Positions 8,668 through 34,354 of a DNA stretch of 40,074 nucleotides are shown one piece after another. The position numbers and the translations under genes were made by a program. The stretch is from Octopus bimaculoides (lineage: Eukaryota). The first letter of the stretch is position 1, and each line of letters opens with the position of its first letter. Location of the stretch: NCBI RefSeq assembly GCF_001194135.2, contig NC_068985.1, positions 48,583,088 to 48,623,161 on the forward strand, given 5' to 3'. Under the pieces are notes generated by a model. It ran no database searches, had not been told where the DNA came from, and saw only the letters and a list, made by a program, of their open reading frames with translations.

Positions 8668-9084
8668 ATGTATGTATGTATGTATGTATGTATGTATGAT
8701 CTATACATATTTGTATGTTTAGTTTTATGCATGCATCGTCATGCATATAGCTGCATATCTAGACATGCTGATATATATTTAAATGATAAACTTCTGGAAA
8801 GTTATAAACATATTTATAGTTCCAGTGATAGATTGCATCTGTAGTCTTCGAATTAACTTTCTCCTTTCTGGTTGTGAGAAGCCTAATTTCTCCAGATTGG
8901 ATTTAGGCAGTGCGTAACATATTTCAGGGTTCCAATAATTACAGGTATAAACTGAACTTGTAATTTGGATAGAGTCACTGCAGATTTCTCAATTGTTCAG
9001 CGTACGTATTCTCTTTCTCACTGATCTTCAGCTTTGTTAATATCCGCTGGCGAGCTAATTTTCACAACTACACAGTTTCTCTTC
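8668..9084 (-). mobile_element. 5'-truncated R4/Dong-like RLE retrotransposon, family X copy A (ORF C-terminus plus part of 3' UTR)
   Basis: Clear DNA similarity to 29880-30185 and 24589-24780. Translates approximately to KENTYAE...LEKLGFSQPERRKLIRRLQMQSITGT...FQKFII*. Flanked on both sides by (TATG)n. Confidence 0.92.
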
Positions 9085-9244
9085 GTGTATGTATGTATGT
9101 ATGCATGCATGTATATATGTATATATGTATTTGTATATGTATGTTTGTAGTATTCTTTTATTTTACAGGTTTCGGTCAATGAAATATGGTTCCGCTGCCA
9201 CTAGCGACAGCGTTGTTTTTGTTTCCTTTACAGTTACTGTTTTT

Positions 9245-10655
9245 AGAATATGAGAAAGTGTAGTGTGTTAGTATTGAAGAGAGGCAAAATCAAATGTATG
9301 GACGGGCTAACGATACCGTCGGAGGAGGTTTTATGAAGCAGAGAGATGATAGAGAAAGAAATGACAGAAAAATTTAAGGTGGAGTACTTACACAGACTGA
9401 GACTGATCCTTAAGTGGAAATTAAATGGACGGAATAAGATCGAAGCTATCAACACCTGGGCGGTTTCATTCCTTAGATATGGAGCAGAAGTAATCACATG
9501 GACAGTAGACAAAATAAAAAGCTTAGACAGAAAGACAAGTTGCTAACTAGATATAGGTCACTCCACCCAAAAAGTGACATAGACAGGCAGTGTGTACCAA
9601 GAAAAAGATGGGGAAGACGATGTATTGGATGCAAACACAGCGTTAGAGCAGAAGAAAGCAACATATCATGCTATGTAAAAAATGCCAAAGAACAGCTATT
9701 ATTAGAAGTAAGAGGGTCAGACTTGTGTAGGATGAAAGATTGCAAAGATGAGGCATTATGCAAGAAATTGAAAACAAATGGAACTGAAAATAGATGGGTA
9801 AAGAAAAGAATGCATGGACAATTTCATGGGGATGTTGAAGATAAGACAGACAGAGAAAAAAGATGGCTGTGGATGACTAAAAGTGATTTATAACCTGAAA
9901 CGGAAGCTCTAATCTGTGCTGCCCAAGAGCAAGCACTAAGCGCAAACTACATAAAATACAGAATAGACAACACAGCAGAAAGTGATAAGTGCAGAATCTG
10001 TGGACAAAACGGTGTAACTGTATGGCATATTACCAGCCAATTTACGCCACTAGTCCAGAAGAAATACAAGAGACGCTGCCATAATTTAGCTAGGCTTTTC
10101 CATTGGACACTTTGCAACAAGTATGAACTTGAAAGACAATAAATTGGTCCGACCACAAACCTGAAGGTACCTTCGAAAATAGAAATGCAAAGATCCTGTG
10201 AGATTTTATGATTCATTGAGACCATGAGATAGATAATAGGAAGCCGGATATAGTCTTAATTGAGAAAGAAAACAAACTATGCTGGATCATAGATATAGCA
10301 TGCAAAGTTGAAAACTAGGTATGTGATAAGAAAGAAAGAAAACCGAGATATATGACAGGTTAGCTTGGGAAGTTAAGCAGTTGTGGTCGATGTTGTGGTA
10401 GCAGTAGTGCCAATAATTTTCGGAGCCCTGTGAACAGTGAGCAAAATTCTCCAGAAGTGCGTGGAACAAATAGGGGCTGCAAGGAGGATGCAGCACTTGC
10501 AGAAAAGAGCACTGCTTGAAACCGCTCGAATACTCTGGAAGGTGCTCGAAAAATAATAGGTGTTACCTTAGTTCACTGGCAGTGAACAGCTGACACTGTA
10601 GTACATCTCCAGCGATTAGAAGGCTGTGCAAAGGAAATAATAATAATAATAATAT
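9245..10655 (+). mobile_element. 5'-truncated R4/Dong-like RLE retrotransposon, family Y, with (TAA)n tail
   Basis: Frameshifted peptide RKCSVLVLKRGK...NKIEAINTWAV...MHGQF...ETEALICAAQEQAL. Decayed CCHC knuckle CRICGQNGVTVWHITS (~9990). RLE motif KPDIVLIEK...IIDIAC (~10241). Ends KVLEK* at 10554-10556, followed by an 80 bp UTR and a (TAA)5 tail. Confidence 0.93.
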
Positions 10656-10714
10656 ATAATACATACATACATACATACATACATACATACATGCATACAT
10701 ATATATCTACACAT

Positions 10715-11003
10715 GACAATTATGGTTTCAGTTGGTGTATATGTTTTCTTTCATGTGCGTTAACATCCGCTGGACAGCTGACCGTTATAACAGTATGATC
10801 TTTGTTTCCTGTCCCATAGAAAAAGTCGATTATGTTCGCACCGATTTGATGTTTTTTATTGGGGTGATCCACCAGTATTCCTTGTTTTTAAAGGTGTGAA
10901 TACCTGCATGTTCTAAAATGCCTTTGACATATATATCAGGGCAGCCCTTCCAATGGTTAGTTTTGTAAATAGTCTTTGCAACCGCCTCAAGGGCACGTAG
11001 TAT
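10715..11003 (-). mobile_element. Internal fragment of a diverged R4/Dong-like element related to family X (post-CCHC to RLE)
   Basis: Translates as MRYYVPLR..AVAKTIY...KEYWW.TPIK...LWDRK...VSCPADVN...KENIY. This parallels RYYLPMRHDVVARTL...WWN...RPDIMIWDR...ISCRADVN in the copy at 30100-30390. Confidence 0.8.
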
Positions 11004-11030
11004 CTCATAAACATCTCTCTCTCTCTCTCT

Positions 11031-11034
<4 letters not shown>

Positions 11035-11068
<34 letters not shown>

Positions 11069-11152
11069 TTATGTATGTATGTATGTAAGTATGTATGTAT
11101 GTATGTATGTATGTATGTATGTACATATGTATGTATGTATGTATGTATGTAT
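11035..11152. repeat. Compound (TA)n-(TATG)n microsatellite
   Basis: Directly visible. Confidence 0.95.
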
Positions 11153-11517
11153 GCAAACACGCGCACACTTATTGAACTGTGGCTATGCTGTAGTAAATAA
11201 ATTGAATACTTTCATAGATGTGCAAAATGAGGTTAAGCATATTGCACAACACCAAGAACAACATATCAACAATTACATTATTTTTATCGTATACATTATA
11301 TATTGCCCGTTTTTGATGTCTAGAAACTGTCATTTCAATTCACTTTATGGAATATTTATGCTTGGCAATTTTACACTTCAAAGACCATATGTTTGGTAAG
11401 GAATTATACTTTAGGCATCAATATATAACTTTGAAACTCGAGAGAATTCAGCAAGTAGTTCCAATAATTATTGTTTCTACAGAAGCTTTTCTCTTTTTTT
11501 GTGTGCCTGTCTGTCTG

Positions 11518-11518
<1 letters not shown>

Positions 11519-11565
<47 letters not shown>

Positions 11566-11657
11566 NNNNNNNNNNNNNNNNNNNNNNNNNNNNNNNNNNN
11601 NNNNNNNNNNNNNNNNNNNNNNNNNNNNNNNNNNNNNNNNNNNNNNNNNNNNNNNNN

Positions 11658-11703
<46 letters not shown>
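11519..11703. repeat. (CT)n microsatellite spanning an N-gap
   Basis: (CT)n on both sides of the gap at 11566-11657. Confidence 0.95.
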
Positions 11704-11707
<4 letters not shown>

Positions 11708-12167
11708 TGTGTCTCTCCCTCCATCTGTCTATTCTTGTGTTTGTTATTTGGTGAACTTTATACTGCGGAAGGTGGTACTGCTTTGCTTGGGTTATAGATT
11801 ATCAGTAACTTAATTTTGATCATGTAAATAAGTAAGCTTTGATACCACGTCATACTAGTACGTATTCGAATGCGTGGCTATTATATAGTAGGAGGGGTCT
11901 ATTGAATGTAATGCAAAGTTGAGCATGGTATATTTATTCACTGACAGAATTCGTTTAAACTGCACATGCAGAATAACTCTTCTTCTGTAGAAGGATGCTG
12001 TGTCATCACCACAAGTTAAGTATTTACACCATCATTAAAACTAACTCACATAGATTCAGAAATATAGTGGGTAGCTAGATCGCGAGACATATAGATGCAG
12101 CTATAAATGTATATTTACTTAAACACACACACACACATACATATCTACATATATATATAAAGTGAGG

Positions 12168-12168
<1 letters not shown>

Positions 12169-12221
<53 letters not shown>
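12169..12221. repeat. (GT)n microsatellite
   Basis: Directly visible. Confidence 0.95.
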
Positions 12222-12224
<3 letters not shown>

Positions 12225-12620
12225 CCCGTAGAACTTCTGAAGTTAGCAACTGATTTTCCCCAAACTGGGGATATACATTACATATGTTTCAGATTTGGTT
12301 TTAAAAGTTTTCATATAATGAGTAATGGGGCCTCTAGGGACAACCCCTCCCCACCTTCCCTGGGATACGTACGATTGCCCGCATGTCTCACACATTGCTT
12401 CTGTTCAAACTGGAAAGAACAGCTACTGAAATTATATAAATAGGTTGTATTAAATAGATGAACCGATGTAGGCTTCAGACTGTGTTGTCTAAGTGGTAGC
12501 AATAATAGCCTGTTCCCGCAGTACCATAGGTAGTAATCTGTTGGAATAAAAACCGTTTGGAACGCACTTTGTTTATTATGAAAAATAGTCTAAAATGTGT
12601 TAAATCCTTAGCAACTATTC

Positions 12621-13027
12621 AACAAGAAAAGCACTCGGAGAGCGCAGGCCTCTGCCAAGCTCATTTTAAGATAGATACGCGAGTAAAATTATTACTAATA
12701 GAGAAACGAAAATAAACTTTGGAAATAGCAACGCCACAATAGGTTACGTGGAAACGATGAACATGTTGTCAAGGGAGATAATCAAAGAACGTAACATTGT
12801 AATACTTCATGTAAAGTAAATATAACAAATGAAAAATCCTCCAAGAATCCATTAAAATTTCCAGATCACTACCCAAATTTCATCATCTGTTCCTTGTGTC
12901 ATTACCAACTTTTCCTGCAAGTTTCATCAAATACCATTCACTACTTTTGAGTTATTTTGCACACAGATGGACAGGCGGACAAACCAACGCTGATGAAAAA
13001 CATTATCTCCTTCCTTGGCGGAGGTAA
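12621..13027 (-). mobile_element. Non-autonomous Helentron-type element (HINE/DINE-1-like architecture)
   Basis: Subterminal inverted repeats cctctgccaag (12649-12659) and cttggcggagg (13014-13024) match at 10/11. A 3' stem-loop GCGCTC-TCC-GAGTGC (12631-12645) lies outside the second subTIR. GACA-like microrepeat near the 5' end. T-rich termini. Confidence 0.7.
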
Positions 13028-14059
13028 ATATTTTCTTTTAGCTTCAGTATCAAAGTATTCCTTCTAAGTATAGACGAAGTCCATACAAATATTCNNNNNN
13101 NNNNNNNNNNNNNNNNNNNNNNNNNNNNNNNNNNNNNNNNNNNNNNNNNNNNNNNNNNNNNNNNNNNNNNNNNNNNNNNNNNNNNNNNNNNNNNNNNNNN
13201 NNNNNNNNNNNNNNNNNNNNNNNNNNNNNNNNNNNNNNNNNNNNNNNNNNNNNNNNNNNNNNNNNNNNNNNNNNNNNNNNNNNNNNNNNNNNNNNNNNNN
13301 NNNNNNNNNNNNNNNNNNNNNNNNNNNNNNNNNNNNNNNNNNNNNNNNNNNNNNNNNNNNNNNNNNNNNNNNNNNNNNNNNNNNNNNNNNNNNNNNNNNN
13401 NNNNNNNNNNNNNNNNNNNNNNNNNNNNNNNNNNNNNNNNNNNNNNNNNNNNNNNNNNNNNNNNNNNNNNNNNNNNNNNNNNNNNNNNNNNNNNNNNNNN
13501 NNNNNNNNNNNNNNNNNNNNNNNNNNNNNNNNNNNNNNNNNNNNNNNNNNNNNNNNNNNNNNNNNNNNNNNNNNNNNNNNNNNNNNNNNNNNNNNNNNNN
13601 NNNNNNNNNNNNNNNNNNNNNNNNNNNNNNNNNNNNNNNNNNNNNNNNNNNNNNNNNNNNNNNNNNNNNNNNNNNNNNNNNNNNNNNNNNNNNNNNNNNN
13701 NNNNNNNNNNNNNNNNNNNNNNNNNNNNNNNNNNNNNNNNNNNNNNNNNNNNNNNNNNNNNNNNNNNNNNNNNNNNNNNNNNNNNNNNNNNNNNNNNNNN
13801 NNNNNNNNNNNNNNNNNNNNNNNNNNNNNNNNNNNNNNNNNNNNNNNNNNNNNNNNNNNNNNNNNNNNNNNNNNNNNNNNNNNNNNNNNNNNNNNNNNNN
13901 NNNNNNNNNNNNNNNNNNNNNNNNNNNNNNNNNNNNNNNNNNNNNNNNNNNNNNNNNNNNNNNNNNNNNNNNNNNNNNNNNNNNNNNNNNNNNNNNNNNN
14001 NNNNNNNNNNNNNNNNNNNNNNNNNNNNNNNNNNNNNNNNNNNNNNNNNNNNNNNNNNN

Positions 14060-14124
<65 letters not shown>

Positions 14125-14685
14125 TTATAAATACACTAAATACACAAGTCATAAATACACACTACAGGATACACGCAACGGGTCATATGCGAGAAAAAAA
14201 GACTTGCTTGGTTAAACGATCATAGCTATAACATAAAAATATTTATGACGGCTTGTCTCCATCAATTACTCTGGCAATATATTAACAGCAACTTTAAGTG
14301 GGTCATTTATAAAATTTAAGGATTTCAACAGAAACTGAGGAACTAAAGACAATAAGTAACACATTGAAGTCTATATTCCTGTGTGCTTAAATTTTAGAAC
14401 GGTCTTGAAAGGAAATAAATGTTGCTAATAGCCCGGATGTGTGTGTTTGTGTCTGTATATTTGCTTGTGCGTGTGCTTGTGTATGCATGTGCGTGTGTAT
14501 GCGTGTGTTTGTGTGTATTTGTGTGTATGTGTGCGTGTATATGGGTGTATATATATATATATATATAGGTAAATTAAAATTTAGAGGTAATACTTGGCAA
14601 TTGTAAGCACCTGTGTATGCCAGCTAGTGGTTGCGGTGAAAGAATAAATTGTAAATCCCAAAAATAACAACAAAACTACAAAGGA

Positions 14686-14756
14686 TTCCGCGGTACACGT
14701 GTTTCAAGCTTTCTATGTGTATAATTTACAATATAAAGCCATCCTCAGCCGCAAAA
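14686..14756 (-). ncRNA. Minimal type I hammerhead ribozyme (Penelope-like element type)
   Basis: Minus strand reads UUUUGCGG-CUGAGGA-UGGCUUU[loop]AAAGCUU-GAAAC-ACGU-GUA-CCGCGGAA. Complete core (CUGANGA, GAAA, GUA triplet), 8 bp stem I with two GU pairs, extended stem II, and a 2 bp stem III with a palindromic loop. Confidence 0.8.
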
Positions 14757-14946
14757 ATTATTTATCTCCCAGGAAATTATACCACATCGGCGTTAAAGTA
14801 GGAAGAAAGGTGTGATGTAAGAGGTGAAGATCGTTTCGGTATTCTGTATAGTACTATACCTCGTATAATTCTCCACCCACACATAATCTCTCCGGTCCTC
14901 CGAAAACCTTCCATACCTTGCCACGATTCAGTGTGTAGTGTTAAGT

Positions 14947-14978
<32 letters not shown>

Positions 14979-14995
14979 CACATATACATACATAC

Positions 14996-15026
<31 letters not shown>

Positions 15027-15058
15027 GTATCTATTATACACAAATATCTATGTGTGCA

Positions 15059-15103
<45 letters not shown>

Positions 15104-15265
15104 TGCAGGGATCCAGTATATCTAAATGCAACAAAAAATTACTCCATCCAGTGAGACATAAATATCAGTTTAATAGACGATTACGAAAATACTACTTATG
15201 ATGTCAGATTTATACCATAGGTCCATCCAATTATCATTTCAGGTTCAGTTCATATGTTAGATGTA

Positions 15266-15715
15266 TTTAAAAGCCAGGACGCTGGAACGTGAAAAAAAAA
15301 TGAGAAAGAAAAGTGAACGAGAACAAAGAAAGGTAAGAAGACCAAAATCAACATCCTCATTCATTATAGAAATCGTAATAAATATAGCTGGTGTAGGATA
15401 AATTAACGAAGTAGGCTAAAGTTTCCGAGACAGCTACTCAATGCTCGGTGTTCGAAAGTTTCAACAGGTGCAAGGACATACAACGGTTTCTTTCGTCAAA
15501 CTGGAGGCTACCAGCCCCTCCGGAGTGAGTAGCTGTCTCGCACTTTCGTGTCCCCTCTTATATTATACTGCAGGAGGTACATTAATTATGATTTCCGCAA
15601 TCAAAGTGGTTGTAGATCTTGGTTTTTGTACTTTCCTTTTCTTTCTCCTCGTTTCATTATTTGCATTATCGTTCATTTTCTCATTTTCTTACTGTCCAGT
15701 GTTTTGCTTTTTAAA
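15266..15715. mobile_element. Foldback/MITE-like element with long imperfect inverted arms
   Basis: Perfect 15 bp inverted repeat cgagacagctactca (15426-15440) / tgagtagctgtctcg (15526-15540). Outer arms align by eye to about 15266 and 15715. The spacer is 85 bp. Confidence 0.65.
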
Positions 15716-15789
15716 AATATTGTAATATTAATGTATTAAAGTAATTTTAACATATTAAATATATTATATATTATAGTGCATTATTCTAA

Positions 15790-16200
15790 TGAACAGAACT
15801 CCACCAAATTCGGTTTGTTCTTCCAGAACCTATACATACATGTACGACATATATATTCATTGGCTCAACAGCCCTCACCGTTTGTTTTCTACTGTCTTGT
15901 TCTCACTGTCCTGTTTTTGTTGCCACTTTTACCCTTTGCAAAAAATCCCAAATTTTATTTAATTTGTTTGCAGGAAGAACTGTTTCAACGAAGTCACCTA
16001 TTGTCCTTATCTTCGAAATGCGGAGTAGATGAAACAGGGACAACTGATGAAGGGGAATATTCTTTATGTTACTTGTCTCGTTTCTCTGTTTGTGTGTTTT
16101 GTTGTTCGAAAAAAGTTCGTTTTCTGTTTTCGTTTTTATGTTTTCGTTTCTCATTGTGTTTAACAATTTTTTGATGTCCTGTACCCATATATACATGTAT
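15790..16200 (+). repeat. Dispersed repeat, possibly a Penelope-like terminal repeat relic
   Basis: Carries paired segments and a CTGATGA motif (16044-16050). The family assignment is from recollection and is unverified. Confidence 0.35.
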
Positions 16201-16203
16201 ATA

Positions 16204-16245
<42 letters not shown>

Positions 16246-16477: not shown

Positions 16478-16514
<37 letters not shown>

Positions 16515-23760: not shown

Positions 23761-24588
23761 NNNNNNNNNNNNNNNNNNNNNNNNNNNNNNNNNNNNNNNN
23801 NNNNNNNNNNNNNNNNNNNNNNNNNNNNNNNNNNNNNNNNNNNNNNNNNNNNNNNNNNNNNNNNNNNNNNNNNNNNNNNNNNNNNNNNNNNNNNNNNNNN
23901 NNNNNNNNNNNNNNNNNNNNNNNNNNNNNNNNNNNNNNNNNNNNNNNNNNNNNNNNNNNNNNNNNNNNNNNNNNNNNNNNNNNNNNNNNNNNNNNNNNNN
24001 NNNNNNNNNNNNNNNNNNNNNNNNNNNNNNNNNNNNNNNNNNNNNNNNNNNNNNNNNNNNNNNNNNNNNNNNNNNNNNNNNNNNNNNNNNNNNNNNNNNN
24101 NNNNNNNNNNNNNNNNNNNNNNNNNNNNNNNNNNNNNNNNNNNNNNNNNNNNNNNNNNNNNNNNNNNNNNNNNNNNNNNNNNNNNNNNNNNNNNNNNNNN
24201 NNNNNNNNNNNNNNNNNNNNNNNNNNNNNNNNNNNNNNNNNNNNNNNNNNNNNNNNNNNNNNNNNNNNNNNNNNNNNNNNNNNNNNNNNNNNNNNNNNNN
24301 NNNNNNNNNNNNNNNNNNNNNNNNNNNNNNNNNNNNNNNNNNNNNNNNNNNNNNNNNNNNNNNNNNNNNNNNNNNNNNNNNNNNNNNNNNNNNNNNNNNN
24401 NNNNNNNNNNNNNNNNNNNNNNNNNNNNNNNNNNNNNNNNNNNNNNNNNNNNNNNNNNNNNNNNNNNNNNNNNNNNNNNNNNNNNNNNNNNNNNNNNNNN
24501 NNNNNNNNNNNNNNNNNNNNNNNNNNNNNNNNNNNNNNNNNNNNNNNNNNNNNNNNNNNNNNNNNNNNNNNNNNNNNNNNNNNNNNNN

Positions 24589-24975
24589 AGAAACTAGGCT
24601 TCTCAAAACCAGAAAGAAAAAGCTAATTCGAAGACTACAGATTCAATCCATCACTGGAACTGTAAGAATTTGTAACACTTTCCAGAAGTTTATCATTCAA
24701 ATATATATGAGCATGTTTAGATATGCAACTATATGCATGAGAACACATACATAAAACATACAAATCTGCACATACATACATACATACATACAGACAGACA
24801 GACAGACACAAACACACACACACGCACACACACACACACACATACACACACACAAACAAACAAAAATAGCCTGTTGTTGATGTTGAAGTTCCAATGAACT
24901 TGGTTCTAGGTTAGAAACCGGTTCCTTCTCTATTGGCAAGAAATTTTGAAATAAACTGAATAATGACATACATAC
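24589..24975 (+). mobile_element. R4/Dong-like family X copy C (ORF end plus complete 3' UTR; upstream part in gap)
   Basis: KLGFSKPER..LIRRLQIQSITGTV...FQKFII, then a UTR with an internal microsatellite, ending gaataatga-catacatac like the copy at 29688. Confidence 0.92.
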
Positions 24976-25728
24976 TAAGACACATACATGCATATACACA
25001 CACACACATACATACAATCGGTGTTCGTAGTTTTGATAATAAATTCCTACATGATAACCTGAAAAAAACTAGGGTTTTCAGAAAAAAGCCAAGCAGCTAG
25101 CTTACACGTTACTAATACAATATGTAAGTGGAACAGTAAAAATATGCAATCGTTTTCTCAAGATTAACATGTGACTTTGCATTTGTTATCTCTATTCCAA
25201 CGATAGAGCTTTGTATCTTTGTTAGAAACGAGCGATATCCTTACAGGACACATTTAAATACCTTAAATTGGAAGGAAGTATAAATATTACGTAGCATAAC
25301 ATTACATATTTGTATATGATTTAAATACAATCAAGACTATAATATGCCTATCTGTTTGAGAAGAGAGCCGATAAAGTAGTAGGCGTCGTAAGGTTAATAC
25401 AACGTTGATATATACTGAAACCACTGATGCCCCTGGTTCAGCGCAGTGTAAGGAGTAAAAGAAATAAGAAAACATATAACATAATAAAACAATATATTGA
25501 AGTAGCTAATATTTTTCTAAAGACAACCGTTCTGTTAAATAAGTAAATCGACAAAGTATTGTCTCTGAAACATAACAAGGAATACTAAATTTGTTGACAA
25601 TAGATTAGTGATGATAGTAGTCGTTTGTTCTATGAGTTTAATTCAAAACATAGAAAAATTGTGATACTACCAGCGATACATCATCAAGGAAACCGTTAAA
25701 TGTAACAACTGATAAATAATATATGTTC

Positions 25729-25982
25729 TTTGTATTTTGTTAATGCCAAGGGATATACTTTGAATGACAGTGAATAATTTCCCATGACGCACAATATTGA
25801 TGTATAGGAAGTACAAACTCTCTCTCTGCTCTTTTACTTTTTAAACTGTGATAGCTGAAATTTCAGTTTCAAATGTAAGTTTCCAAATAATTAGTAGCGT
25901 GGCCATTGTTCAGGATACGTATGATCTCTACGAGAATGTTTCACAAGAATAATTTATCAACACGATTGTATTGTATTAATGT
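25729..25982 (+). repeat. Direct repeat copy 1 (254 bp, near-identical to 27631-27884)
   Basis: Offset 1902 bp. Two substitutions seen (ctctg/ctctc and tttatc/tttgtc). Confidence 0.95.
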
Positions 25983-26139
25983 AGGTGTGTGTGTGTGTGT
26001 ATGTGTGCGTGTGTGCGCGTGCGAGTGCTTGTATGTGTGTGTGTAAATATATATACTGCATGTTACATCACAAACGCACACACACAAACACGCGCAAACA
26101 CACAAACACACATATATACACAGAGACACAGAGAAATAG

Positions 26140-26153: not shown

Positions 26154-26242
<89 letters not shown>

Positions 26243-26245: not shown

Positions 26246-27630
26246 AGAGACATACATGCATACATATACAATTAGATTCATATAAACATACTAACATTTA
26301 TATACGTCTTTGTATATGTAAGTATGTATGTGTTTGCGAGTGTGTCTGTATGTTTATTTTGGGTGTGAATATAGTATAAGTCAAAGCGAGTATCTGGACG
26401 CCAATCACACGACAATGCAAATATTAACTGAAGCAACTGTGATAATTAGTTGCAAGAGAATAATCAAGTATGTATTAATTATATTATTTGACTTTATTTC
26501 ATTAAATACACTCATTAAAGGAACATAATTTGTCTCAATGACCTCCTATGAAAGACTCTATCCATGTTAGAATTGAAATTCATCAACTAATGTCACTGAA
26601 ATATCTATTAATTGCAATAATGTTGCAATAATTTGCATAATATCCCCAATCAATATTTACAGAAACAGAAATTGTGTCATTGATATTATTTATTCTTTTA
26701 CTCCTTCACTGGAATTAAACATTGGACTATGGCCATACTGTGGCACCAGTTTGTATTAAAGTTTTACTCATAGACACTGGACGGCAATGTCCCCTCACTA
26801 TTCAATGGTGCATCTTCAGATTTACTCCATTTTGCTCCATTTTAGTATTATTACAAATTAGTACCCATACAGAATATTCTGGAACACCGGCCTGTTTATA
26901 CACGCTGTGTAATAACTTCAAAAGTATTTAACTGGTGCTCGGTCAATCAATAAAATTATTGAATAGTCTATGTTCCCCATACGAAACCAGAAATAATATT
27001 TCTATTTGAAATAACATTTAATTTTTCTTCTGTTCGGTATATAATCCATCTATTCCATTCTGATATATTCGTGATCATGTCCCTTCTGATATACTCCTGA
27101 TCATGTATTCTATCTCATGCATTCAGTCCATCTCTAGTATGCATGTGATTAGCCTTTTTTCTTATACAAGATGTAGAGTATTAATATTTGAGTTTGACTT
27201 ATGCTTCTACTTCCGCCTAAGCCTAAGCTATCTCATCACCACAGAGATGTATAAGCCAATGTTTGAACAGATAAGCGAATGAGTACTAAACGCCTACAGC
27301 TATGTATATTTTGTTAACAAAAGTGATAGTATGCAGCACAACGAAGTAAAGAAATAGTCTCAATTGCACTTTCGGCGCTGTATAAAGTAAGGAATTATTC
27401 TCGACACAGTTGAAGATACGTGAAGACTGACTTTGACTAATAAATACCTATCAAGCATATTCGAGGCACTAACGCTGACGAAATACAAAACAAGGATATG
27501 AAGGCTGACAAAGTGCTGGTTTCTTAATTAGGCAACACGTGCATTGCAGTTTCACCTGATCTATATATACTTTATTTTATCGAAATTAAAATATCAACTG
27601 AAATGACACTAAATCACAATGATATCAACG

Positions 27631-27884
27631 TTTGTATTTTGTTAATGCCAAGGGATATACTTTGAATGACAGTGAATAATTTCCCATGACGCACAATATT
27701 GATGTATAGGAAGTACAAACTCTCTCTCTCCTCTTTTACTTTTTAAACTGTGATAGCTGAAATTTCAGTTTCAAATGTAAGTTTCCAAATAATTAGTAGC
27801 GTGGCCATTGTTCAGGATACGTATGATCTCTACGAGAATGTTTCACAAGAATAATTTGTCAACACGATTGTATTGTATTAATGT
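27631..27884 (+). repeat. Direct repeat copy 2
   Basis: Near-identical to 25729-25982. Similarity resumes briefly at tgcgcgt(a/g)cgagtgcttgt. Confidence 0.95.
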
Positions 27885-27924
27885 GGGTGTGTGGTGGGGG
27901 TGCGCGTACGAGTGCTTGTCTACG

Positions 27925-28760
27925 TTTTTCTGACATTTTCAATTTTCTTGTTTTATTGTAAAATCATCTACCTACAGATTGAAACAAAGGATAACTTGTT
28001 GATAATAAATGCTGTGAGTGTGCTGAATTTTGGATAATATCACCATCTAAACGATCTAACTTTTTCTGGAAAAAGAGTACTTAAATTATCATGCTGGAGC
28101 ATATAACACTTCTGCTTATGGAAGCAGTTACTTTTTCATTGTAATGTTTATATCATCATGTTGCTAGGATTAAACGGTTCCTCTAATAGTATTTCAATGT
28201 TTAAGTAATTCATAATTAACAACACCGTTCGTATTTCAGAAGACACAAAGCAAGAATTTCTGTGTATGAACACTTGGATTTTGGTGCTCACAGTAGTTTC
28301 TCATTTGCTGACCCAGTAAAAACTAAATTCTCTCTCGAATCCTTCACTCCATCGTTGATCCAGAAAGTGTCATGAATGAATCATTGTTTAAAAGAATCTC
28401 GCAGATGCAAAGTTAAATTAAGTTCCCAAATGAGATTTAATAAGATGGCTAAATTCCCTCCTTACACTTTTTACTGATTTGCATGATGTCACCTGGAAAA
28501 TATAACATACATTCAGTTTCTGCCCTAAATCTCAGGTGCTTTTTCGAGGATCTAATCCAAGTATTATTCATAAAAATTGCCCCTCATAGTGACTCCTCTT
28601 CTAGAATGAGCTCTAGTGGAGATATATTAATCGCCATTTTTAAACCGTTAAAAACAAGAAAAGCATTTGCGAGGTTCACTGCATCAAGCTGCACTGCAGA
28701 AATGGTCTCCCTCCCATGTGTAGGTATTTCTCTGTGAAAATTGTTACATAAGCATTGGCG
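27925..28760 (-). mobile_element. Mariner transposon relic 2 (old, decayed transposase)
   Basis: Ordered motifs across frameshifts: RFKNGD, NDSF, PSVHTQKFLLCVF*NTNGVVNYELL, MLQHDN (second catalytic Asp), SYPLFQS. Confidence 0.75.
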
Positions 28761-29582
28761 AATACGTTACTCTTTAATGTATTGATACTCTATGGGTTTA
28801 ATCTTTGTTAAAGACTGTAGTGATACATTTCTGACTAGGAGACATTATAAACAGACCTAGAGGTTATATTACACCATTTAAATGACGTCAAGCCTTGGGT
28901 GAGTAATAATTTACAGCAGTGATATAATTATTTTCCGCGTACCCCAATAATTAACGCACTAAGGCAAGAAATTTCATTAATTACAAATACATTCGTAGCG
29001 GGGAGAAAGAGTTAGCTTAATGATTAATATTAGTCAAGAATGGCTGGGAGGACAACACAAAAATTATATACTCTTTTACTCGTTTCAGCCATGTGGCCGT
29101 GGTCATACTGGAGCACCACCATAATTAAGATTATTTTAAAATCATTTTCAATGCAACAGAATATCTTGGCTCACTACGTTGAATGACTGAAATTACTGAA
29201 AGGAGTGTAATAGAGAAATGAAAATAAAACTTTAAATATTTTTGTTATTTATTGGATGATTATGAAGGTCCACCGTAAACAGGGGTTTCATTAACCGGAC
29301 ACAAAATCTTATGTATGTATAAATTCGTATGTGTCATTTACACTTTGTACTTCATAAAATCGTTTATTATTATTTTTTCACTGGTTTCAGTCATTTGGTT
29401 GAGACCATGCTCGTGCTCAGCCACATATTAACTCCAAGTACTTTAGTATAATATACTACAGCATCTTCATATACTACGAACGACAAAGTGGGCATAGGCG
29501 TTAAAGGTAGATAATTCAGTAAAATACTGATTATTTATCGATCATCCCAAGTTGACAGGTGAACATATATGTGTGTATGTTG

Positions 29583-29650
<68 letters not shown>

Positions 29651-29687
29651 GTATGTATGTATGTATGTATGTATGTATGTATGTATG

Positions 29688-32600
29688 TCATTATTCGAGA
29701 TTTCTTACCCATAGGGAAAGAACCGGATTGTAACCTAGATCCAAGGCTCCATCAACAACAGGGCATTTTTGTTTGTATATATGTATGTATGCATGTATGT
29801 ATGTATGTATGTATGTATGTATGTGTGTGTGTGTGCAGATTTGTTTGTTTTATGTATGTATTCTTATGCATATAGTTCATATGTATTTAAATGATAAACG
29901 TCTGGAAAGTTTTACAGATTTTACAGTTCCAGTGATGGATTGGATCTGTTGTCTTCGAATTAGTTTTCTCTTTTCTGGTTTTGAGAAGCCTAATTCCTCA
30001 AGATTTGTATTTAGGTAGTGTGTTACATATTCCAGGGAACCAATAATTGCAGATATAAACCTGAACTTGTAACTGTAGATTTCTCAATAATTCAGCATAG
30101 GTGTTCTCTTTTTCACTGCTATTGAGCTTTATGTTAACATCTGCTCGACAGCTAATTTCCACAACTGTGCACAGTTTCTTTTCTCTATCCCAAATCATTA
30201 TATCAGGTCTATTCTGCTTTCATTTTATTGGGGTCTTCACTACTACATTCCACCACTATTCCTTTTTATTATGAGTGGCTATGGCTTCTACCATATCGTG
30301 GGTTTTATTTCTTTGTCCTTGGGATTATCCTTCTAACGGATTTCATTATAGTGTCCTAGCTACAACGTCATGTCTCATCGGTAGATAATACCGTGATGAC
30401 ATTTTCGGACAACTGGTTATGGTGTGGGTGAAATCTTGTGGGTGAAATTTTCAGTGTGAACTCCACAAAGTCTGCATCGGTAATCACACGTTACGGGTGT
30501 ACCAGGTACTTTGATATTTCCTGTTACTGGATTGCAAACACCTACCCTTCAAAGTGGGAGGTAGTAATCCGGCTATTCGTCCATGATAAACTGCTCTGAT
30601 GATCGATGTTATTATCATCACGGAGCTTTCTACTAACATCCATGCATAGTCTTCTGCTCATATAGGCTCATCATTTCATCTGACACGTTGCGCTAGAGTC
30701 GTGCGACTGCTTTGGGTTAGCAGACAAAATGTGTTGCTCAAGGAGCTCCCTTCCAAGTCTCATGATGTTATCAGCCTCATGATGTTATCAGCCTCATGAT
30801 GTTATCAGCCTCATGCATGCAATCTTGGTCAAGGGATGCACTTCGACACTTGGTGGTTAAAAGATGTTACCGAAGGGATATGATGCGACATTCAAAGGCA
30901 TTTTTGATTGATGTTGAGCCTCTTCCACCTTGTTTTCGTTTTAGGTAGAGGTGGTCTACATCACTGTTTATGTGGCAATCATGTTCGCTTGTTAATATTT
31001 TTCGGGTTTTCACATCAAGCGGGTTTTCTCATCAAGCGTCCAATCAAGCTGCCTAGACGTTGGTATGAGTACTGGCACTGCAAACACATTGTGAGCCACG
31101 GTTTTATTGAATGCAGAGAATTCTGGGGTCCAAATTGTCCTTATTCGGCGGTAATATTCTTTAGTGACACGTGTTTTGTTACAGGTGCCACTGTAAGACA
31201 TATTTTCATCTACCCCTAGATACCTGTAACATTCATCGTCAGATACAGGGGAAACTGTCAAATTATTGACAGAGATGTCACTAGTGTGGTTTATAGTCCC
31301 CCCCCCCCTTTTTATAACCATATAGCAACATTTATCCTGACCAAACTCCAACCCTACATCTTTTAAGAATGTTGCAACTAGGAAAAGGCTCTTTTTCATC
31401 TCATGCATATTCTTTGCAGAAAGTTTTAAGTCATCCACAGAAAAGCAGCGTGTAATTTTGGTATTTCTGTTTCCTTGTGAAACAGTGAGATACCCATCAA
31501 ATTTCCTTAACATGAATGACAAGGGGTTTATAGAAACTATAAACATCACAGAGGGTGTGTCTCCTCGGAATATGCCTTTGCGATATTGTATTCTATCGGT
31601 GATAATACATTCACTCTTTGTGTTTAATTTCAAGATGGTGGCCCACGATGAAGTCAGGTCAGCTNNNNNNNNNNGTGTTTAATTTCAAGATGGTGGCCCA
31701 CGATGAAGTCAGGTCAGCTGTGGCTTTGACTATTCTCACTGGAACTTTAGCAAGTTGAAGGGCTTCTAGCATCCATGAGTGAGGAACAGAGTCAAAGGAT
31801 TTTTATAATCTAGCCACATTGAAACTAGGTTCCTCCTATACCCTCGCACCTCTACGATCACAGTTTTGTTGATTGACAATTGCTCGGCACATTCCCAGAT
31901 TCCGTTCTTCTCAGCAGCTTATTCTGTTGTGATAATGTTATTGGTTTCACAATGGTGCTGGAGAAAGAGGTTTAAACATGCTGTATATATTTTATACATT
32001 AAGTTCTAGCATACAACTGGCCAGTAGATTTTTTCCATGTGTGTAGTTCTGCATTTGGGAATTAATTTTGTCTCTGCCAGAGCTACTGTTCCCAATAAAA
32101 GCTTGCTGGTACAGATTGATAAGGTATGGTCGGTAGAATGTTAGCTTCTTGTACCAATATCCAACAATCAAGTCTCTTCCAGGTGCTTTTCCATTCTGGA
32201 GTTTCTGGATCACAGTTGCAAGAGTTTCACCATCAATGTTGTATGTCTTGGATGTAACGCAGGAGCAATAACTTTTTCGGATTTCTTCCAGCCAGAGGGC
32301 ATCTTTGTTAAATTCCTTCTCTTCACTCCATATTTTCTTCCAGAAGAAGTCTATGTCTTCTCGTGAAGGCGCTCCTGTGATGTTCACTGATCCTGTCTCT
32401 CATGTCTCTGTATACTGCTGGCCGGTTGCGGTTAATTTTTTTGTTTATTATTCTTCTCTCGGTTATTCTCGTCTGATGTCAGAGTTTTTCACTGACAGCT
32501 TTTAGCTCCTGCTTGAGGGTAATCAGTTTGCAAGTGAGTGTCTCCTTTTTGCTGTCTCCAAACATCATTTTTATCTTCTTTACTTTCTGTTGGTGGGACG

Positions 32601-32993
32601 TATAGTGATTTGCTTGTTTGTATACAATGAGTATCATTACATGACCGATTATCTTCCGTAAACCAATTATCTTTTTCTCTCTCTTCAAAACCCAAGATGG
32701 TGCTTCCTTTATTATTTCGGTTTTGTTTACTTTTGAATATCATTCATTACTGTTTTATAATAGTAGACATCACATATAGACAAGCGTTAATCTGCCAGTA
32801 TGTGGGTTCACCATACTGTTGTAAATACTCATCACCAATTTCGTTAAGAGTTTATAATATCTTATCTGGTGGTTTTTTACTTACCTTAATAGAGAATCCT
32901 CTCGCCTCGAGAGAGTCCTTCAAAGCCAAAGTTATTTTTTGTCTGAAAATTTGACTATGTGCGCATTTTATCGGCATATAATCCTTACTGCTT

Positions 32994-33048
<55 letters not shown>

Positions 33049-33770
33049 AATAACCGTTGCGGTTGTGCCTGCTATTTACCATAGTCGTAGTATGGGGCAA
33101 TGGTCAGTTACTTGAGGCAGTAATGTAGTTTGGCTGGCAGGCACTATGGAATCTGTTGGAACGTTCACGTGGTGGTTTTATAGATTCACGTTTTTGTTTT
33201 TGTTTATAGAGTTGGGAAGAAGGTTATTTTTCGATTTTTAATAAAGTTAGAGTTACTACTTTCTTTCTATGTTCTACAAATGTTGCTCGTTGGCATAGGT
33301 GCTTCGCAGTAAAATGATATAATTCTGGATGCAGATAGTCCGAATATGATTTCAATCGATTCATATAGCCAACAGCGGGGTTTTGTTTCGCTTTTTCATA
33401 GCAGCTAAATAGATCATTGTTCAATTCTTAACTCCAAGAGAAATGGGTTTTTTAGTTACGGTTTCTTCTCTAACTACAGCTAGAAAGAATGTGTTTACCT
33501 ATTGAGCTGTTGTTTTCGTTCTGTTCCTGGATTGTGTTATTGATGTTGTGTCCAGCCATGTTGTTTGTAGCATCTCTCTGTATGGAATATGCAAGCTCCA
33601 GTCGAAAATCACTACGACCGTGAATAAAAGGCTCTCCCAATTAATTCATCTGAAGATTAACCAGTTATTTAACAAGGCTGATAGTTTTGGCTCCAAAGCT
33701 GGAGACAGTATTCTTCGTATGTTTGATAAATAGTCTCCCACGCCAAATACGCGACTTGTCGCTTCGAATG
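29688..33770 (-). mobile_element. Near full-length R4/Dong-like RLE non-LTR retrotransposon, family X copy B (inactivated)
   Basis: Single long decayed ORF: FWKKIWS, KAPGRDLI, WLDYKKSFDSVPH, GIFRGDT, FSVDDLK, YRYLG (ORFs 31992-32387 and 31010-31633), CRLCG knuckle (~30470), RPDIMIWDR...VEISC (RLE, ~30200), ending KFII*. No APE endonuclease. 3' UTR ends in (CATA)n. Confidence 0.95.
32994..33048. repeat. (CTA)~18 microsatellite inside copy B
   Basis: Directly visible. Confidence 0.95.
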
Positions 33771-34354
33771 TTTATATATGTGTGTATGTATGTATGCATA
33801 TATGTATGTAAGTAGGTGTATGATTGAATAACACAATCGCACGGATATATCTACGCCAATATGCTATTTTAATCATTTCTGTGTATGACGAGATTTTTAT
33901 ATCAAGAATAGAGCAAACATACACAAAGGGAATATCTACAATGAAAATGAACTTACTGAAGATAATTCTATAAATGTGTGTTGAAGTAGGTTCTTTCGAT
34001 TTTCTAAGACGAATTCTACTGATTAAAAACATTGATAACAGTATTATAAATTTTCATGCCATAGTCTCAAATGAGTAAATCACATTAGTGAAAAGAGTAA
34101 GGCTGCTTTATTTATTTATTATCTGTAAAATGATGTAAACACGAGATATTGGGAGCCAAAGGACTTAATGTGTTGATCAGAATTTAACAGTGTCATTTAT
34201 TCTATAGTGTGTATACAACTAATTGTTAAGCTTGAACATAGAAACTTTATATGCATAAATGCAGAGACAAATATGCTTTCATGGGTATGTATAAACATAA
34301 ATATATATATATGTAAGTGTGTGTGTGTATGTATATGTATGAAAAAATATATAT

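What the first reader, a model, noticed from the sequence alone, without database searches (positions are those of the whole stretch)
8668..33810. R4/Dong-like retrotransposon family that appears to target (CATA)n tetranucleotide microsatellites
Seen: copies B and C end at the same junction, GAATAATGA|CATACATAC (29688 and 24966). Truncated copy A has (CATA)4 directly at its 5' break (9085) and (CATA)7 at its 3' end. A CATA-rich tract lies about 15 bp upstream of the apparent 5' end of copy B (33784-33810). Known: R4-clade elements use a sequence-specific RLE endonuclease, and Dong inserts into (TAA)n. Inference: this family nicks (TATG/CATA)n, and its tails expand and spread those repeats. I do not recall a CATA-specific R4-clade family being described. 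It would offer a mechanism for the very high CATA density here and a new RLE specificity.
Basis: partly seen in the sequence, partly recalled or inferred. Interest (0 to 1): 0.78.

Follow-up and report, generated by a model that had tools for sequence, protein, structure and literature searches.

The report
Octopus Dong-like LINE inserting into CATA repeats
The window, very probably octopus DNA, holds several dead copies of a very abundant Dong/R4-type jumping gene that has (CATA)n repeats at both ends here, genome-wide and in distant relatives, so it most likely inserts into that microsatellite and spreads it; this is a new target for a known kind of site-specific element.

Summary
Copies B (29689-33771, - strand) and C (24589-24966, +) end at the same junction, GAATAATGA|CATACATA. 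Copy A (8699-9085, -) has CATA tracts at both ends. B's 5' end abuts a CATA-rich tract.

New evidence supports insertion into (CATA)n:
- In public DNA runs of the same organism, the family's 3' end is followed by (CATA)n and its full-length 5' end is preceded by (CATA)n.
- There are roughly 25,000-70,000 3' ends but only a few hundred 5' ends.
- Eight elements 43-51% identical in protein, from other assemblies, carry one microsatellite on both sides: CATA in five loci (one has (AT)n at its 3' side) and ACTT in three.
- Two 5'-truncated copies in tandem (L008) are each preceded by CATA.

The protein is collinear with a Bombyx Dong-like element over 1005 aa (E=3e-153). It matches R2 only in the reverse transcriptase.

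- B, C and an O. sinensis copy have an internal CATA tract followed by an 80-105 nt distal segment. A ends at that internal tract.
- Three more Dong-like fragments (D, E, F) lie in the window.
- No 5' ribozyme was detected.
- Some truncated copies lack CATA at the 5' junction.

Nicking specificity is inferred, not shown. Dong-R4 elements are known in octopus, but I found no description of a CATA target.

The parts
29689..33771 (-). Copy B: full-length but dead Dong/R4-like element, about 4.03 kb once the gap artefact is removed. It has a 5' UTR of about 210 nt and a single ORF with an N-terminal three-helix domain, RT, a CCHC motif and a C-terminal restriction-like endonuclease (RPDIMIWD...EISC).
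   Evidence: tblastn of the 1164-aa L003 ORF covers aa 9-1162, with at least 7 frame changes and about 25-30 stops. Weak Pfam RVT_1 hit. Homologue search E=1e-160. The 5' end is set by where other genomic copies stop aligning, at 33767/33771.
29568..29688 (-). B's 3' flank: a (CATA)n tract with (TA)n, starting directly after GAATAATGA.
   Evidence: Genome-wide consensus after the same end is ACTGAATAATGA|CATACATACATACATACA.
29689..29769 (-). B's distal 3' segment (81 nt), ending in GAATAATGA. It is the conserved true 3' terminus of the main subfamily.
   Evidence: Shared with C and with the O. sinensis copy L005. Its summed depth is of the same order as the body's 3' end.
29770..29861 (-). Internal (CATA)n/(CACA)n microsatellite inside B's 3' UTR.
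33772..33812 (-). CATA-rich tract abutting B's 5' end.
   Evidence: Genome-wide loose-end consensus upstream of 33767/33771 is (TATG)n on the + strand.
31665..31674 (.). 10-N assembly gap inside B, flanked by an exact 45-nt duplicate (31620-31664 and 31675-31719). It is an unmerged overlap.
8699..9085 (-). Copy A: 5'-truncated 3' end covering the last ~100 aa and the proximal UTR. It lacks the distal segment.
   Evidence: blastn 77% to B. tblastn to aa 710-810 of P0003. Alignment A1.
8668..8698 (-). A's 3' tail, (CATA)7. It aligns to the internal microsatellite of B and C.
9086..9153 (-). Degenerate (CATA)17 tract directly at A's 5' truncation point. It also separates A from D.
9247..10658 (+). 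Copy D: 5'-truncated element of a second Dong-like family with no nucleotide similarity to B. The ORF stops near 10555. The UTR ends in (TAA)5 ATATAA. The protein match spans 9247-10550; the true 5' limit lies somewhere in 9154-9247.
   Evidence: tblastn, 134 HSPs, best E=3e-44. Sequence.
10659..10705 (+). D's 3' tail, (TACA)11, which is (CATA)n.
10741..11014 (-). Copy E: weak, doubly truncated Dong-like fragment spanning the CCHC motif to the start of the endonuclease.
   Evidence: tblastn E=0.003-0.02 from several relatives, collinear. The motif GTTAACATCCGCTGG is shared with A and B.
11007..11153 (-). Compound (AG)n(TA)n(CATA)30 tract on E's 5' side, read on the element strand.
24589..24966 (+). 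Copy C: 3' end with an internal microsatellite (24769-24862) and a distal segment (24863-24966) ending GAATAATGA. Its 5' part is lost in gap 23761-24588.
24967..25016 (+). C's degenerate CATA/CACA tail.
25064..25159 (+). Copy F (tentative): the extreme C-terminus of a Dong-like ORF (..GFQKKAKQL..SGTVKICNRFL), about 50 nt downstream of C's CATA tail.
   Evidence: tblastn E=0.03-0.1 to aa 776-808 of P0003. Weak.

Best explanation
These are copies of a very abundant non-LTR retrotransposon of the R4/Dong group, very probably in an octopus genome. It has one ORF with an N-terminal three-helix domain, a reverse transcriptase, a CCHC motif and a C-terminal restriction-like endonuclease. It integrates preferentially into (CATA)n microsatellites.

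Proposed mechanism, by analogy with R2 and Dong (inferred, not shown):
1. The protein binds the repeat, probably through the N-terminal domain.
2. The endonuclease nicks the TATG strand.
3. The (CAUA)n end of the RNA pairs with the nicked repeat and primes reverse transcription.
4. The second strand is cut within the same repeat, so the new copy, often 5'-truncated, sits between two CATA tracts.

Each insertion leaves two CATA tracts. The main subfamily also carries a third, internal one. So the family creates its own targets and seeds CATA microsatellites across the genome. All copies in this window are old and dead.
For: Shown:
- Identity. Best homologues E=1e-160. The intact relative L003 is 31% identical to a Bombyx Dong-like element over 1005 aa, E=3e-153. 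PDB R2 proteins match only about 335 aa of RT at E~1e-28. The Bombyx element's 5' end matches the published Dong 5' primer at 14 of 18 bases (PMC3774820).
- Genome-wide 3' junction. 106-122 contigs per run continue ACTGAATAATGA|CATACATACATACATACA.
- Genome-wide 5' junction. 30-40 contigs per run stop at 33767/33771 and continue into (TATG)n on the + strand.
- Abundance. Against single-copy depths of 12.8, 54 and 48, 3' ends number about 2.5-7x10^4 and 5' ends about 10^2-7x10^2.
- Relatives.
  - CATA on both sides in L003, L006 and L011.
  - In L008, CATA precedes and follows both tandem copies.
  - L007 has CATA at 5' and (AT)n at 3'.
  - ACTT on both sides in L002 and L010.
  - In L009, (ACTT)66 lies upstream and the 3' side is interrupted.
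  - In L006 at least 97 CATA units abut the 5' end, and unique DNA, not another copy, lies upstream of the tract.
- Truncated copies with the repeat directly at the 5' junction: A, the two L008 copies, and the third Bombyx copy with its TAA-like repeat.
- Chance expectation in the window is 0.0012.
- The same 3' architecture is found in O. sinensis (L005).

From the literature: R4/Dong elements insert into rDNA or microsatellites, usually (TAA)n (PMC7998251, PMC4640811).
Against: - No biochemical or empty-site evidence. The nick site and the strand are inferred.
- Full-length copies could carry an upstream (CATA)n inside their RNA, because no 5' self-cleaving ribozyme was detected in B or L006. 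The Bombyx control did give a hit exactly at its 5' end.
- The sample of truncated copies is small and mixed.
  - L005 (O. sinensis) and the upstream copy in L010 have no repeat at the 5' junction.
  - D abuts a tract of the opposite orientation.
  - E and F have the tract 25-55 nt away and are weak matches.
- L003 is flanked on both sides by (GATA)n plus the same ~65-nt segment. That could be read as a long target duplication of a non-CATA site.
- L007 has (AT)n at its 3' end.
- The copy numbers are summed k-mer depths at 80% likeness or better, and are rough.
Confidence: 0.8

Rival explanations
1. The CATA repeats are carried by the element and are not its target. The 3' (CATA)n is a templated or slippage-made tail, as in many CR1, RTE and I-type LINEs. 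The 5' (CATA)n of full-length copies is part of the transcript (read-in from upstream) or is the tail of an upstream tandem copy. Integration sites are essentially non-specific.
For: - No HDV-like ribozyme was found at the 5' end of B or L006, although the Bombyx control was positive. Upstream repeat could therefore stay on the RNA.
- L005 and the upstream copy in L010 show no repeat at their truncated 5' junctions.
- L003 is bracketed by (GATA)n plus a ~65-nt segment on both sides, which is compatible with a long duplication of a non-CATA target.
- Tandem copies occur in L008, L009, L010 and the Bombyx locus.
Against: - Truncated copies A and the first L008 copy have CATA directly at different internal break points. 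An RNA 5' leader cannot supply that.
- In L006, L011 and L007 the upstream tract is preceded by non-element DNA, so it is not an upstream copy's tail.
- The 5' and 3' motifs change together between lineages, CATA/CATA versus ACTT/ACTT.
- The clade's known members are target-specific for microsatellites (PMC7998251).
Confidence: 0.12
2. The association is secondary. The elements insert anywhere AT-rich. CATA tracts then arise and expand from short proto-repeats in the tails. Recombination or gene conversion between the many tracts brings copies and repeats together.
For: - The window is extremely rich in microsatellites of many motifs.
- The tracts are degenerate and compound, for example (TA)n(TATG)n at 29585-29688 and 11034-11153.
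- The D/E/A cluster shows rearranged, doubly truncated fragments.
Against: - It does not explain repeats placed exactly at the 5' ends of full-length copies in consistent phase (...CATA| in L003, L006, L007, L011...CTTA| in L002, L009, L010).
- It does not explain the genome-wide 5' consensus.
- It does not explain the same pattern in unrelated assemblies.
Confidence: 0.05
3. The distal 80-105 nt segment with its CATA tail is a separate short non-autonomous retroposon that inserted into the LINE's own CATA tail in B, C and L005. Under this reading the LINE proper ends as copy A does.
For: - A ends at the internal microsatellite and lacks the segment.
- The segment's summed depth is up to about 1.6-2 times that of the body's 3' end.
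Against: - The segment begins at the same point in B, C and L005.
- It has no other copy in the window apart from the LINE 3' ends.
- Its depth is of the same order as the LINE body.
- A proximal UTR followed by a shared distal segment and then CATA is also seen in both tandem L008 copies.
- If true, it would still be evidence for insertion into CATA.
Confidence: 0.1

Closest known systems
Dong (Bombyx mori; Xiong & Eickbush 1993) and Dong-like elements of the R4 clade
   Same: - Single ORF of about 1150-1280 aa.
- Collinear similarity from the pre-RT region through RT, the CCHC motif and the restriction-like endonuclease (31% over 1005 aa).
- An alignable N-terminal three-helix domain with no zinc fingers.
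- The same microsatellite on both sides, frequent 5' truncation and head-to-tail arrays.
   Different: - The flanking repeat is (CATA)n, or (ACTT)n in a nested sister lineage. In Dong it is (TAA)n, which PMC7998251 reports as the Dong target in most insects, molluscs and cnidarians.
- No HDV-like 5' ribozyme was detected, whereas the Bombyx control has one.
- The 3' UTR of the main octopus subfamily contains an internal microsatellite and a distal conserved segment.
- Copy number is in the tens of thousands.
R4 (Ascaris; Burke et al. 1995)
   Same: The same clade in the literature's classification. It is an endonuclease-bearing, site-specific element.
   Different: R4 targets a site in 28S rDNA, not a microsatellite. 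No R4 sequence was available here for direct comparison.
R2 (solved structures 8gh6, 9nl3, 9dou)
   Same: The same superfamily and the same presumed mechanism: target-primed reverse transcription after an endonuclease nick. RT similarity is E~1e-28.
   Different: Only the RT aligns. R2 has N-terminal zinc finger(s) plus Myb and targets 28S rDNA.
Waldo and Mino (R1 clade) and other microsatellite-specific LINEs: Togen (TG)n, Kibi (TC)n, Koshi (TTC)n (Kojima & Fujiwara 2003/2004; PMC4640811)
   Same: They are LINEs that live in microsatellites. From my own recollection, Waldo sits in (ACAY)n, a motif that includes ACAT, which is CATA.
   Different: R1 and Tx1 elements use an APE-type endonuclease, and Togen belongs near NeSL. 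They are unrelated lineages, so any shared target is convergent.
'Dong-R4' families annotated in cephalopod genomes (PMC8967140, PMC9115989, PMC13282606)
   Same: Almost certainly the same elements. Dong-R4 is reported as one of the most abundant LINE groups in octopus, and five families are recently active in O. vulgaris.
   Different: Those papers do not discuss target sites, and PMC8967140 removed simple repeats before analysis. The CATA association is not mentioned in any paper I could search.

Membership tests
[quoted passage not shown] | Single ORF with RT followed by a CCHC motif and a C-terminal PD-(D/E)xK restriction-like endonuclease, and no APE domain | tested here: met
   B reads CRLCG..H..C and then RPDIMIWD...VVEISC...K. 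The relatives L002, L003, L006 and L007 have the same layout in near-intact ORFs broken by only one or two frameshifts. Pfam finds RVT_1 and a weak zf-RVT match, and no endonuclease/exonuclease/phosphatase domain.
[quoted passage not shown] | RT and whole-protein similarity places it with Dong/R4 rather than R2, NeSL, CRE or Hero | tested here: inconclusive
   It is far closer to a Bombyx Dong-like element (1005 aa, E=3e-153) than to R2 structures (RT only, E~1e-28). The NJ tree roots cleanly on the insect Dong-like sequences. No reference sequences of Ascaris R4, Hero, NeSL or CRE were available, so a full clade phylogeny was not run.
[quoted passage not shown] | N-terminus without zinc fingers but with a divergent Myb/SANT-like domain (PMC7998251) | tested here: inconclusive
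   A conserved N-terminal block (W..ELN.DL..CY..A....GY..R.K..W...HP....T...L.QQA) aligns from octopus B to the Bombyx Dong-like element. AlphaFold2 predicts three helices with pLDDT near 90. No CxxC...HxxxH motif is seen by eye. However, Pfam gives no Myb/SANT hit and Foldseek against the PDB gives nothing below E=1.
[quoted passage not shown] | Site-specific insertion: the same rDNA site or the same microsatellite on both sides of copies | tested here: met
   CATA lies at both ends genome-wide, in the window (A, B) and in L003, L006, L008 and L011. ACTT lies at both ends in L002 and L010. Exceptions are listed in the report.
[quoted passage not shown] | HDV-like self-cleaving ribozyme at the 5' end. 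This is reported for R4 and Dong (PMC3774820). It is a shared trait, not a formal criterion. | tested here: not met
   Rfam in E-value mode finds RF02682 (E=3e-4) exactly at the 5' end of the Bombyx control, L004 1717-1813. It finds nothing ribozyme-like in window 33450-33830 or L006 5800-6100. A divergent ribozyme could be missed, and B is degraded.
Dong in the strict sense | Target is (TAA)n | tested here: not met
   The flanks are (CATA)n. Only copy D has a short (TAA)5 before its (TACA)11 tail.
R2 clade | N-terminal C2H2 zinc finger(s) plus Myb, and insertion in 28S rDNA | tested here: not met
   No zinc-finger motif in the N-terminus. No rRNA or other Rfam family in the window at gathering threshold. 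The flanks are microsatellites.

The most novel reading that the evidence does not exclude
A 'site-specific' LINE has escaped the usual copy-number ceiling because it makes its own target. Each insertion of this Dong-like lineage leaves two or three new (CATA)n tracts. This let it reach tens of thousands of copies and become a main source of CATA microsatellites in octopus genomes. Within the same clade the target unit changed by one base, from CATA to CTTA. That gives natural protein pairs in which the residues that read the repeat, probably in the N-terminal three-helix domain, could be mapped and used to retarget endonuclease-type LINEs.
Probability: 0.35. Interest if true: 0.6.

Novelty: new variant of a known kind. 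Interest (0 to 1): 0.45.

Why it matters
- **Origin of the repeats.** It would explain where much of the (CATA)n microsatellite load of octopus genomes comes from.
- **Abundance.** It would explain why Dong-R4 elements are so abundant there although their clade is normally confined to rare targets. Repeat surveys that discard simple repeats would miss this link.
- **Retargeting.** The clade offers closely related elements with different repeat targets (CATA, CTTA/ACTT, TAA). That is useful material for working out how endonuclease-type LINEs choose their sites, a question of current interest for R2-based gene insertion tools.
- **Limits.** The principle is not new: microsatellite targeting by R4/Dong and other LINEs is established. 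The copies in this window are dead.

Tried and rejected
- **The distal 3' segment as a separate, very abundant SINE.** Its depth first suggested this. I rejected it as the main reading because the LINE body's 3' end has the same order of depth and no free copy occurs in the window. I keep it as a minor rival.
- **A and E as two halves of one element split by D.** Rejected: both contain the same GTTAACATCCGCTGG region with different sequence.
- **Read-laying across the junctions.** No empty-site or joint test was therefore possible. Only repeat-free stretches could be laid.
- **Run searches with L003 and L006, to learn which organisms they come from.** The species behind the ENA assemblies remain unknown.
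- **L001 (O. bimaculoides).** It is a doubly truncated fragment inside a zinc-finger gene array, next to a 6.8-kb gap. It is uninformative.
- **Rfam at gathering threshold** on the window, L002 and L003: nothing. The E-value-mode hits over the repeats (mir-297 and others) are repeat-driven false positives.
- **Myb/SANT fold.** Foldseek and Pfam did not confirm it.
- **tRNA-like sequences next to repeats in L007, L009 and L011.** ARAGORN did not confirm them.
- **Literature.** Seven searches found no CATA- or ACAT-specific R4/Dong element. Repbase, Dfam and Kojima & Fujiwara 2004 were not readable here.


Full report
**What the window is**

The window is AT-rich (35% G+C). It holds dozens of microsatellite arrays and nine N gaps. 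The best named protein matches are from Octopus: 78% identity over 14% of the query to O. bimaculoides LOC106878562, and 54% to an O. sinensis protein. The O. bimaculoides assembly GCA_001194135.2 holds a fragment of the same family, 75% identical in nucleotides. Public DNA runs of one organism hold the window's unique stretches at 99-100% identity. The window is therefore very probably octopus DNA. The species itself was not established.

**Check of the observation**

Self-comparison finds three related 3' ends:
- A: 8668-9084, element on the - strand.
- B: from about 29636 up to about 33775, - strand.
- C: 24589-25016, + strand.

The stated junctions are there:
- B reads GAATAATGA|CATACATA, with its last element base at 29688/29689.
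- C reads the same, with its last base at 24966.
- A has (CATA)7 at 8671-8698.
- A also has (CATA)4, opening a degenerate 68-nt tract, at its 5' break at 9085.
- B's 5' side has a CATA-rich tract at 33772-33812.

The six gaps flagged by the scan's program lie between copies and abut simple repeats. None lies inside a copy. Gap 23761-24588 removes C's 5' part. The 10-N gap inside B is flanked by an exact 45-nt duplicate, so it is an unmerged overlap.

**Anatomy**

B covers aa 9-1162 of the 1164-aa ORF of an intact relative. It has at least seven frame changes and about 25-30 stops. It is a full-length, dead copy of about 4.03 kb. Its translation shows, in order:
- an N-terminal block (..THFSWS.ELNNDLFSCYEKAKQNPAVGYMNRLK..);
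- the reverse transcriptase;
- a CCHC motif (CRLCG..H..C);
- a restriction-like endonuclease (RPDIMIWD..VVEISC).

In B and C the 3' UTR contains an internal (CATA)n/(CACA)n tract. An 81-104 nt distal segment follows it and ends in GAATAATGA. Only then does the terminal (CATA)n begin. A's (CATA)7 aligns to the internal tract, and A lacks the distal segment. An O. sinensis copy (L005, 79-82% identical to B) has exactly the B/C architecture.

Protein searches of the window found three more Dong-like pieces.
- D (9247-10550, +; best E=3e-44) belongs to a second family. Its UTR ends in (TAA)5 ATATAA followed by (TACA)11 at 10659-10705.
- E (10741-11014, -) is weak. It has a compound (AG)n(TA)n(CATA)30 tract on its 5' side.
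- F (25064-25159, +) is weak. It lies about 50 nt after C's CATA tail.

**Genome-wide evidence from public runs**

All runs are Logan contigs, laid at 80% likeness or better.

- 3' junction. With C's distal segment as reference, 106-122 contigs per run continue past position 24955 as ACTGAATAATGA|CATACATACATACATACA.
- 5' junction. With B's 5' region as reference, 19-25 contigs per run stop at 33767 and 11-15 stop at 33771. They continue as GTTTGTATGTATGTATGTATG... and ATGTATGTATGTATG... on the + strand, which is (CATA)n on the element strand.

| Region | Summed depth, X2 | Summed depth, X3 |
|---|---|---|
| Single-copy stretch 37620-37943 | 12.8 | 54.3 |
| Distal 3' segment (peak) | about 8.9x10^5 | about 2.6x10^6 |
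| Body 3' end (peak) | about 5.5x10^5 | about 1.3x10^6 |
| 5' region | 1.6-9x10^3 | 6-29x10^3 |

The single-copy depth in run X4 was 48. These depths imply roughly 2.5-7x10^4 3' ends and 10^2-7x10^2 full-length 5' ends. This is the usual 5'-truncation gradient of a LINE. The numbers are rough, because they sum the mean k-mer depths of contigs.

The depths also settle a side question. At first I took the distal segment for a separate SINE. The LINE body next to it has the same order of depth, and no free copy of the segment occurs in the window.

**Relatives elsewhere**

I fetched loci for eight of the best protein hits. Over the 483 RT columns they are 43-51% identical to B. All come from ENA assemblies of unknown organisms. 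On the element strand the flanks are:

| Locus | 5' flank | 3' flank |
|---|---|---|
| L003 | (CATA)66 | (CATA)23 |
| L006 | at least 97 CATA units abutting the 5' end, with unique DNA upstream of the tract | (CATA)26 after an 800-nt UTR |
| L011 | (CATA)4 | about 8 CATA units |
| L007 | (CATA)8 | (AT)43 |
| L008, two tandem 5'-truncated copies (from about aa 197 and aa 177) | each directly preceded by a CATA tract | CATA |
| L002 | (ACTT)16 | (ACTT)12 |
| L010 | (ACTT)n | (ACTT)n |
| L009 | (ACTT)66 | interrupted by another insertion |

The motif at the 5' side therefore matches the motif at the 3' side. Both change together between lineages.

The junction phase is also regular. The upstream tract ends ...CATA| in L003, L006, L007 and L011. 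It ends ...CTTA| in L002, L009 and L010. Read in that phase, the two targets differ by one base.

A neighbour-joining tree on 483 RT columns puts all these elements, octopus B and a Hydractinia protein in one clade with 100% bootstrap, apart from the insect Dong-like sequences. The CATA lineages are basal and the ACTT ones are nested among them. The inner nodes are weakly supported.

**Family assignment**

The nearest Bombyx homologue (P0072, locus L004) is a tandem array of elements.
- Its 5' end, GCCCCCCTAAGTCCTACC, matches the published Dong 5' primer GCTCCCTAAAATCCTACC at 14 of 18 bases (PMC3774820).
- Its tails are TAA-like.
- Rfam finds an HDV-like ribozyme exactly at its 5' end (RF02682, E=3e-4), as published for Dong.

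The intact L003 ORF aligns to this element over 1005 aa (31% identity, E=3e-153). Against solved structures it matches R2 proteins only over about 335 aa of RT (E~1e-28).

The N-terminal block aligns from octopus to Bombyx and is predicted as three helices with pLDDT near 90. This is the position where PMC7998251 describes a divergent Myb/SANT-like domain in R4/Dong. I could not confirm that fold: Pfam gave no hit and Foldseek gave nothing below E=1.

No ribozyme was found at the 5' end of B or of the intact L006. I file the family in the R4/Dong group as a CATA-associated lineage, and not as Dong in the strict sense. The formal clade phylogeny was not run.

**How it most likely works**

Shown:
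- The same repeat lies at both ends, in this genome and in distant relatives.
- Some truncated copies carry it at different internal break points.
- The element has a C-terminal endonuclease and RT of the R2/R4 type.

Inferred, by analogy with R2 and Dong:
- The protein recognises the repeat. It probably does so through the N-terminal domain rather than the endonuclease itself, as argued for R2 and Dong in PMC7998251.
- The endonuclease nicks the TATG strand.
- The RNA's (CAUA)n end pairs with the nicked repeat and primes reverse transcription.
- The second cut falls in the same tract.

Each insertion leaves at least two CATA tracts. This gives a simple route to both the high copy number and the CATA density. 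In the window, 301 of the 413 bases in CATA tracts of three or more units are attached to Dong-like copies.

**Evidence against, and exceptions**

- Because no 5' ribozyme was seen, full-length RNAs might carry upstream CATA with them. The full-length 5' consensus alone therefore does not prove targeting.
- The truncated copies are the critical class, and my sample is small.
  - Repeat directly at the junction: A, the two L008 copies, and the third Bombyx copy (TAA-like repeat).
  - Repeat within 60 nt: E and F, both weak matches.
  - No repeat: L005; the upstream copy in L010, whose 5' end runs straight into another LINE's RT; and D, which abuts a tract of the opposite orientation.
  - L001 is a doubly truncated fragment and says nothing.
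- Against a background of 0.1-1% this is still a very strong enrichment, but it is not a clean rule.
- L003 is bracketed on both sides by (GATA)n plus the same ~65-nt segment. I cannot explain this with confidence.

**Novelty**

Known:
- R4/Dong elements insert into rDNA or microsatellites, with (TAA)n the usual Dong target (PMC7998251).
- Most endonuclease-type LINE clades are target-specific (PMC4640811).
- Dong-R4 is among the most abundant LINE groups in cephalopods and is recently active in O. vulgaris (PMC8967140, PMC9115989, PMC13282606).

None of the papers I could search mentions a CATA, ACAT or ACTT target for this clade. PMC8967140 removed simple repeats before analysis. Repbase, Dfam and Kojima & Fujiwara 2004 could not be consulted, so an existing note there is possible.

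I rate the finding as a new variant of a known kind: a known mechanism and clade with a target repeat not described in what I could read. It has an interesting consequence for copy number.

Noticed in passing
window 36729-37052: A short stretch with summed depth up to 4.7x10^5 in run X2, against a single-copy depth of 12.8. That implies roughly 37,000 copies at 95% likeness or better. It is a very abundant short repeat, probably a SINE, and is unrelated to the Dong-like family.
   Followed up: no
window 25729-25991 and 27631-27893: Two 263-nt direct repeats, 99% identical and 1.9 kb apart. They could be LTR-like ends, a recent local duplication or an assembly duplication.
   Followed up: no
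window 31620-31719: The 10-N gap at 31665-31674 is flanked by an exact 45-nt duplicate (GTGTTTAATTTCAAGATGGTGGCCCACGATGAAGTCAGGTCAGCT). Two contig ends overlap here and were not merged.
   Followed up: yes
window 32986-33048: A (TAC)21 microsatellite inside copy B's N-terminal coding region. On the element strand it reads as a run of about 17 serines, so a repeat has expanded within the ORF.
   Followed up: no
L003 4446-4504 and 8809-8873: The same ~65-nt segment (..CAAGGCTGAGTCTCTACTGGACTACACCTTATGTTT..GGTGCTGG), each time preceded by (GATA)n, lies on both sides of the CATA-flanked element. It could be a long target duplication, two copies of a (TATC)n-tailed retroposon on the other strand, or part of a composite 3' end.
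   Followed up: partly
L009 4806-5295: A ~400-nt insert lies between two (AAGT)n tracts directly after the ORF stop of an ACTT-type element. On its own strand it is flanked by (ACTT)n on both sides. By eye it has a tRNA-like T-arm (GGTTCAAATCCCC). It may be a non-autonomous element mobilised by the ACTT-type LINE. ARAGORN finds no tRNA there.
   Followed up: partly
L007 5380-5425 and L011 3550-3619: In both loci, which come from one assembly, the CATA tract upstream of the element is directly preceded by the same sequence (..CTCTACCACCTGAGCTATCTGACCA). By eye it looks like the reverse complement of a tRNA-like head. A SINE may abut the same microsatellite. ARAGORN does not confirm a tRNA.
   Followed up: partly
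L010 1450-1660: The upstream, 5'-truncated ACTT-type copy begins with no microsatellite, directly after the RT region of a different LINE (..FADDNTLYYCGE..). This may be a chimera made by template switching at the 5' junction.
   Followed up: no
L001 9500-10866 (O. bimaculoides CM046628.1): A doubly truncated fragment of this family lies inside an array of C2H2 zinc-finger repeats. It is annotated as part of a protein (LOC106878562), so the gene model probably includes transposon sequence.
   Followed up: no
window 33770-33806; L006 5801-5873: Rfam in E-value mode reports mir-297 and other microRNA families over the CATA tracts (E down to 1e-6, far below the gathering scores). These are repeat-driven false positives.
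   Followed up: yes
window 29860-31660: A run that the tool labels 'RNA?' (type guessed) holds 40% of this stretch's sampled 31-mers (run X1). Family sequence may therefore be present in transcripts. I did not examine whether this reflects its own transcription or read-through.
   Followed up: no
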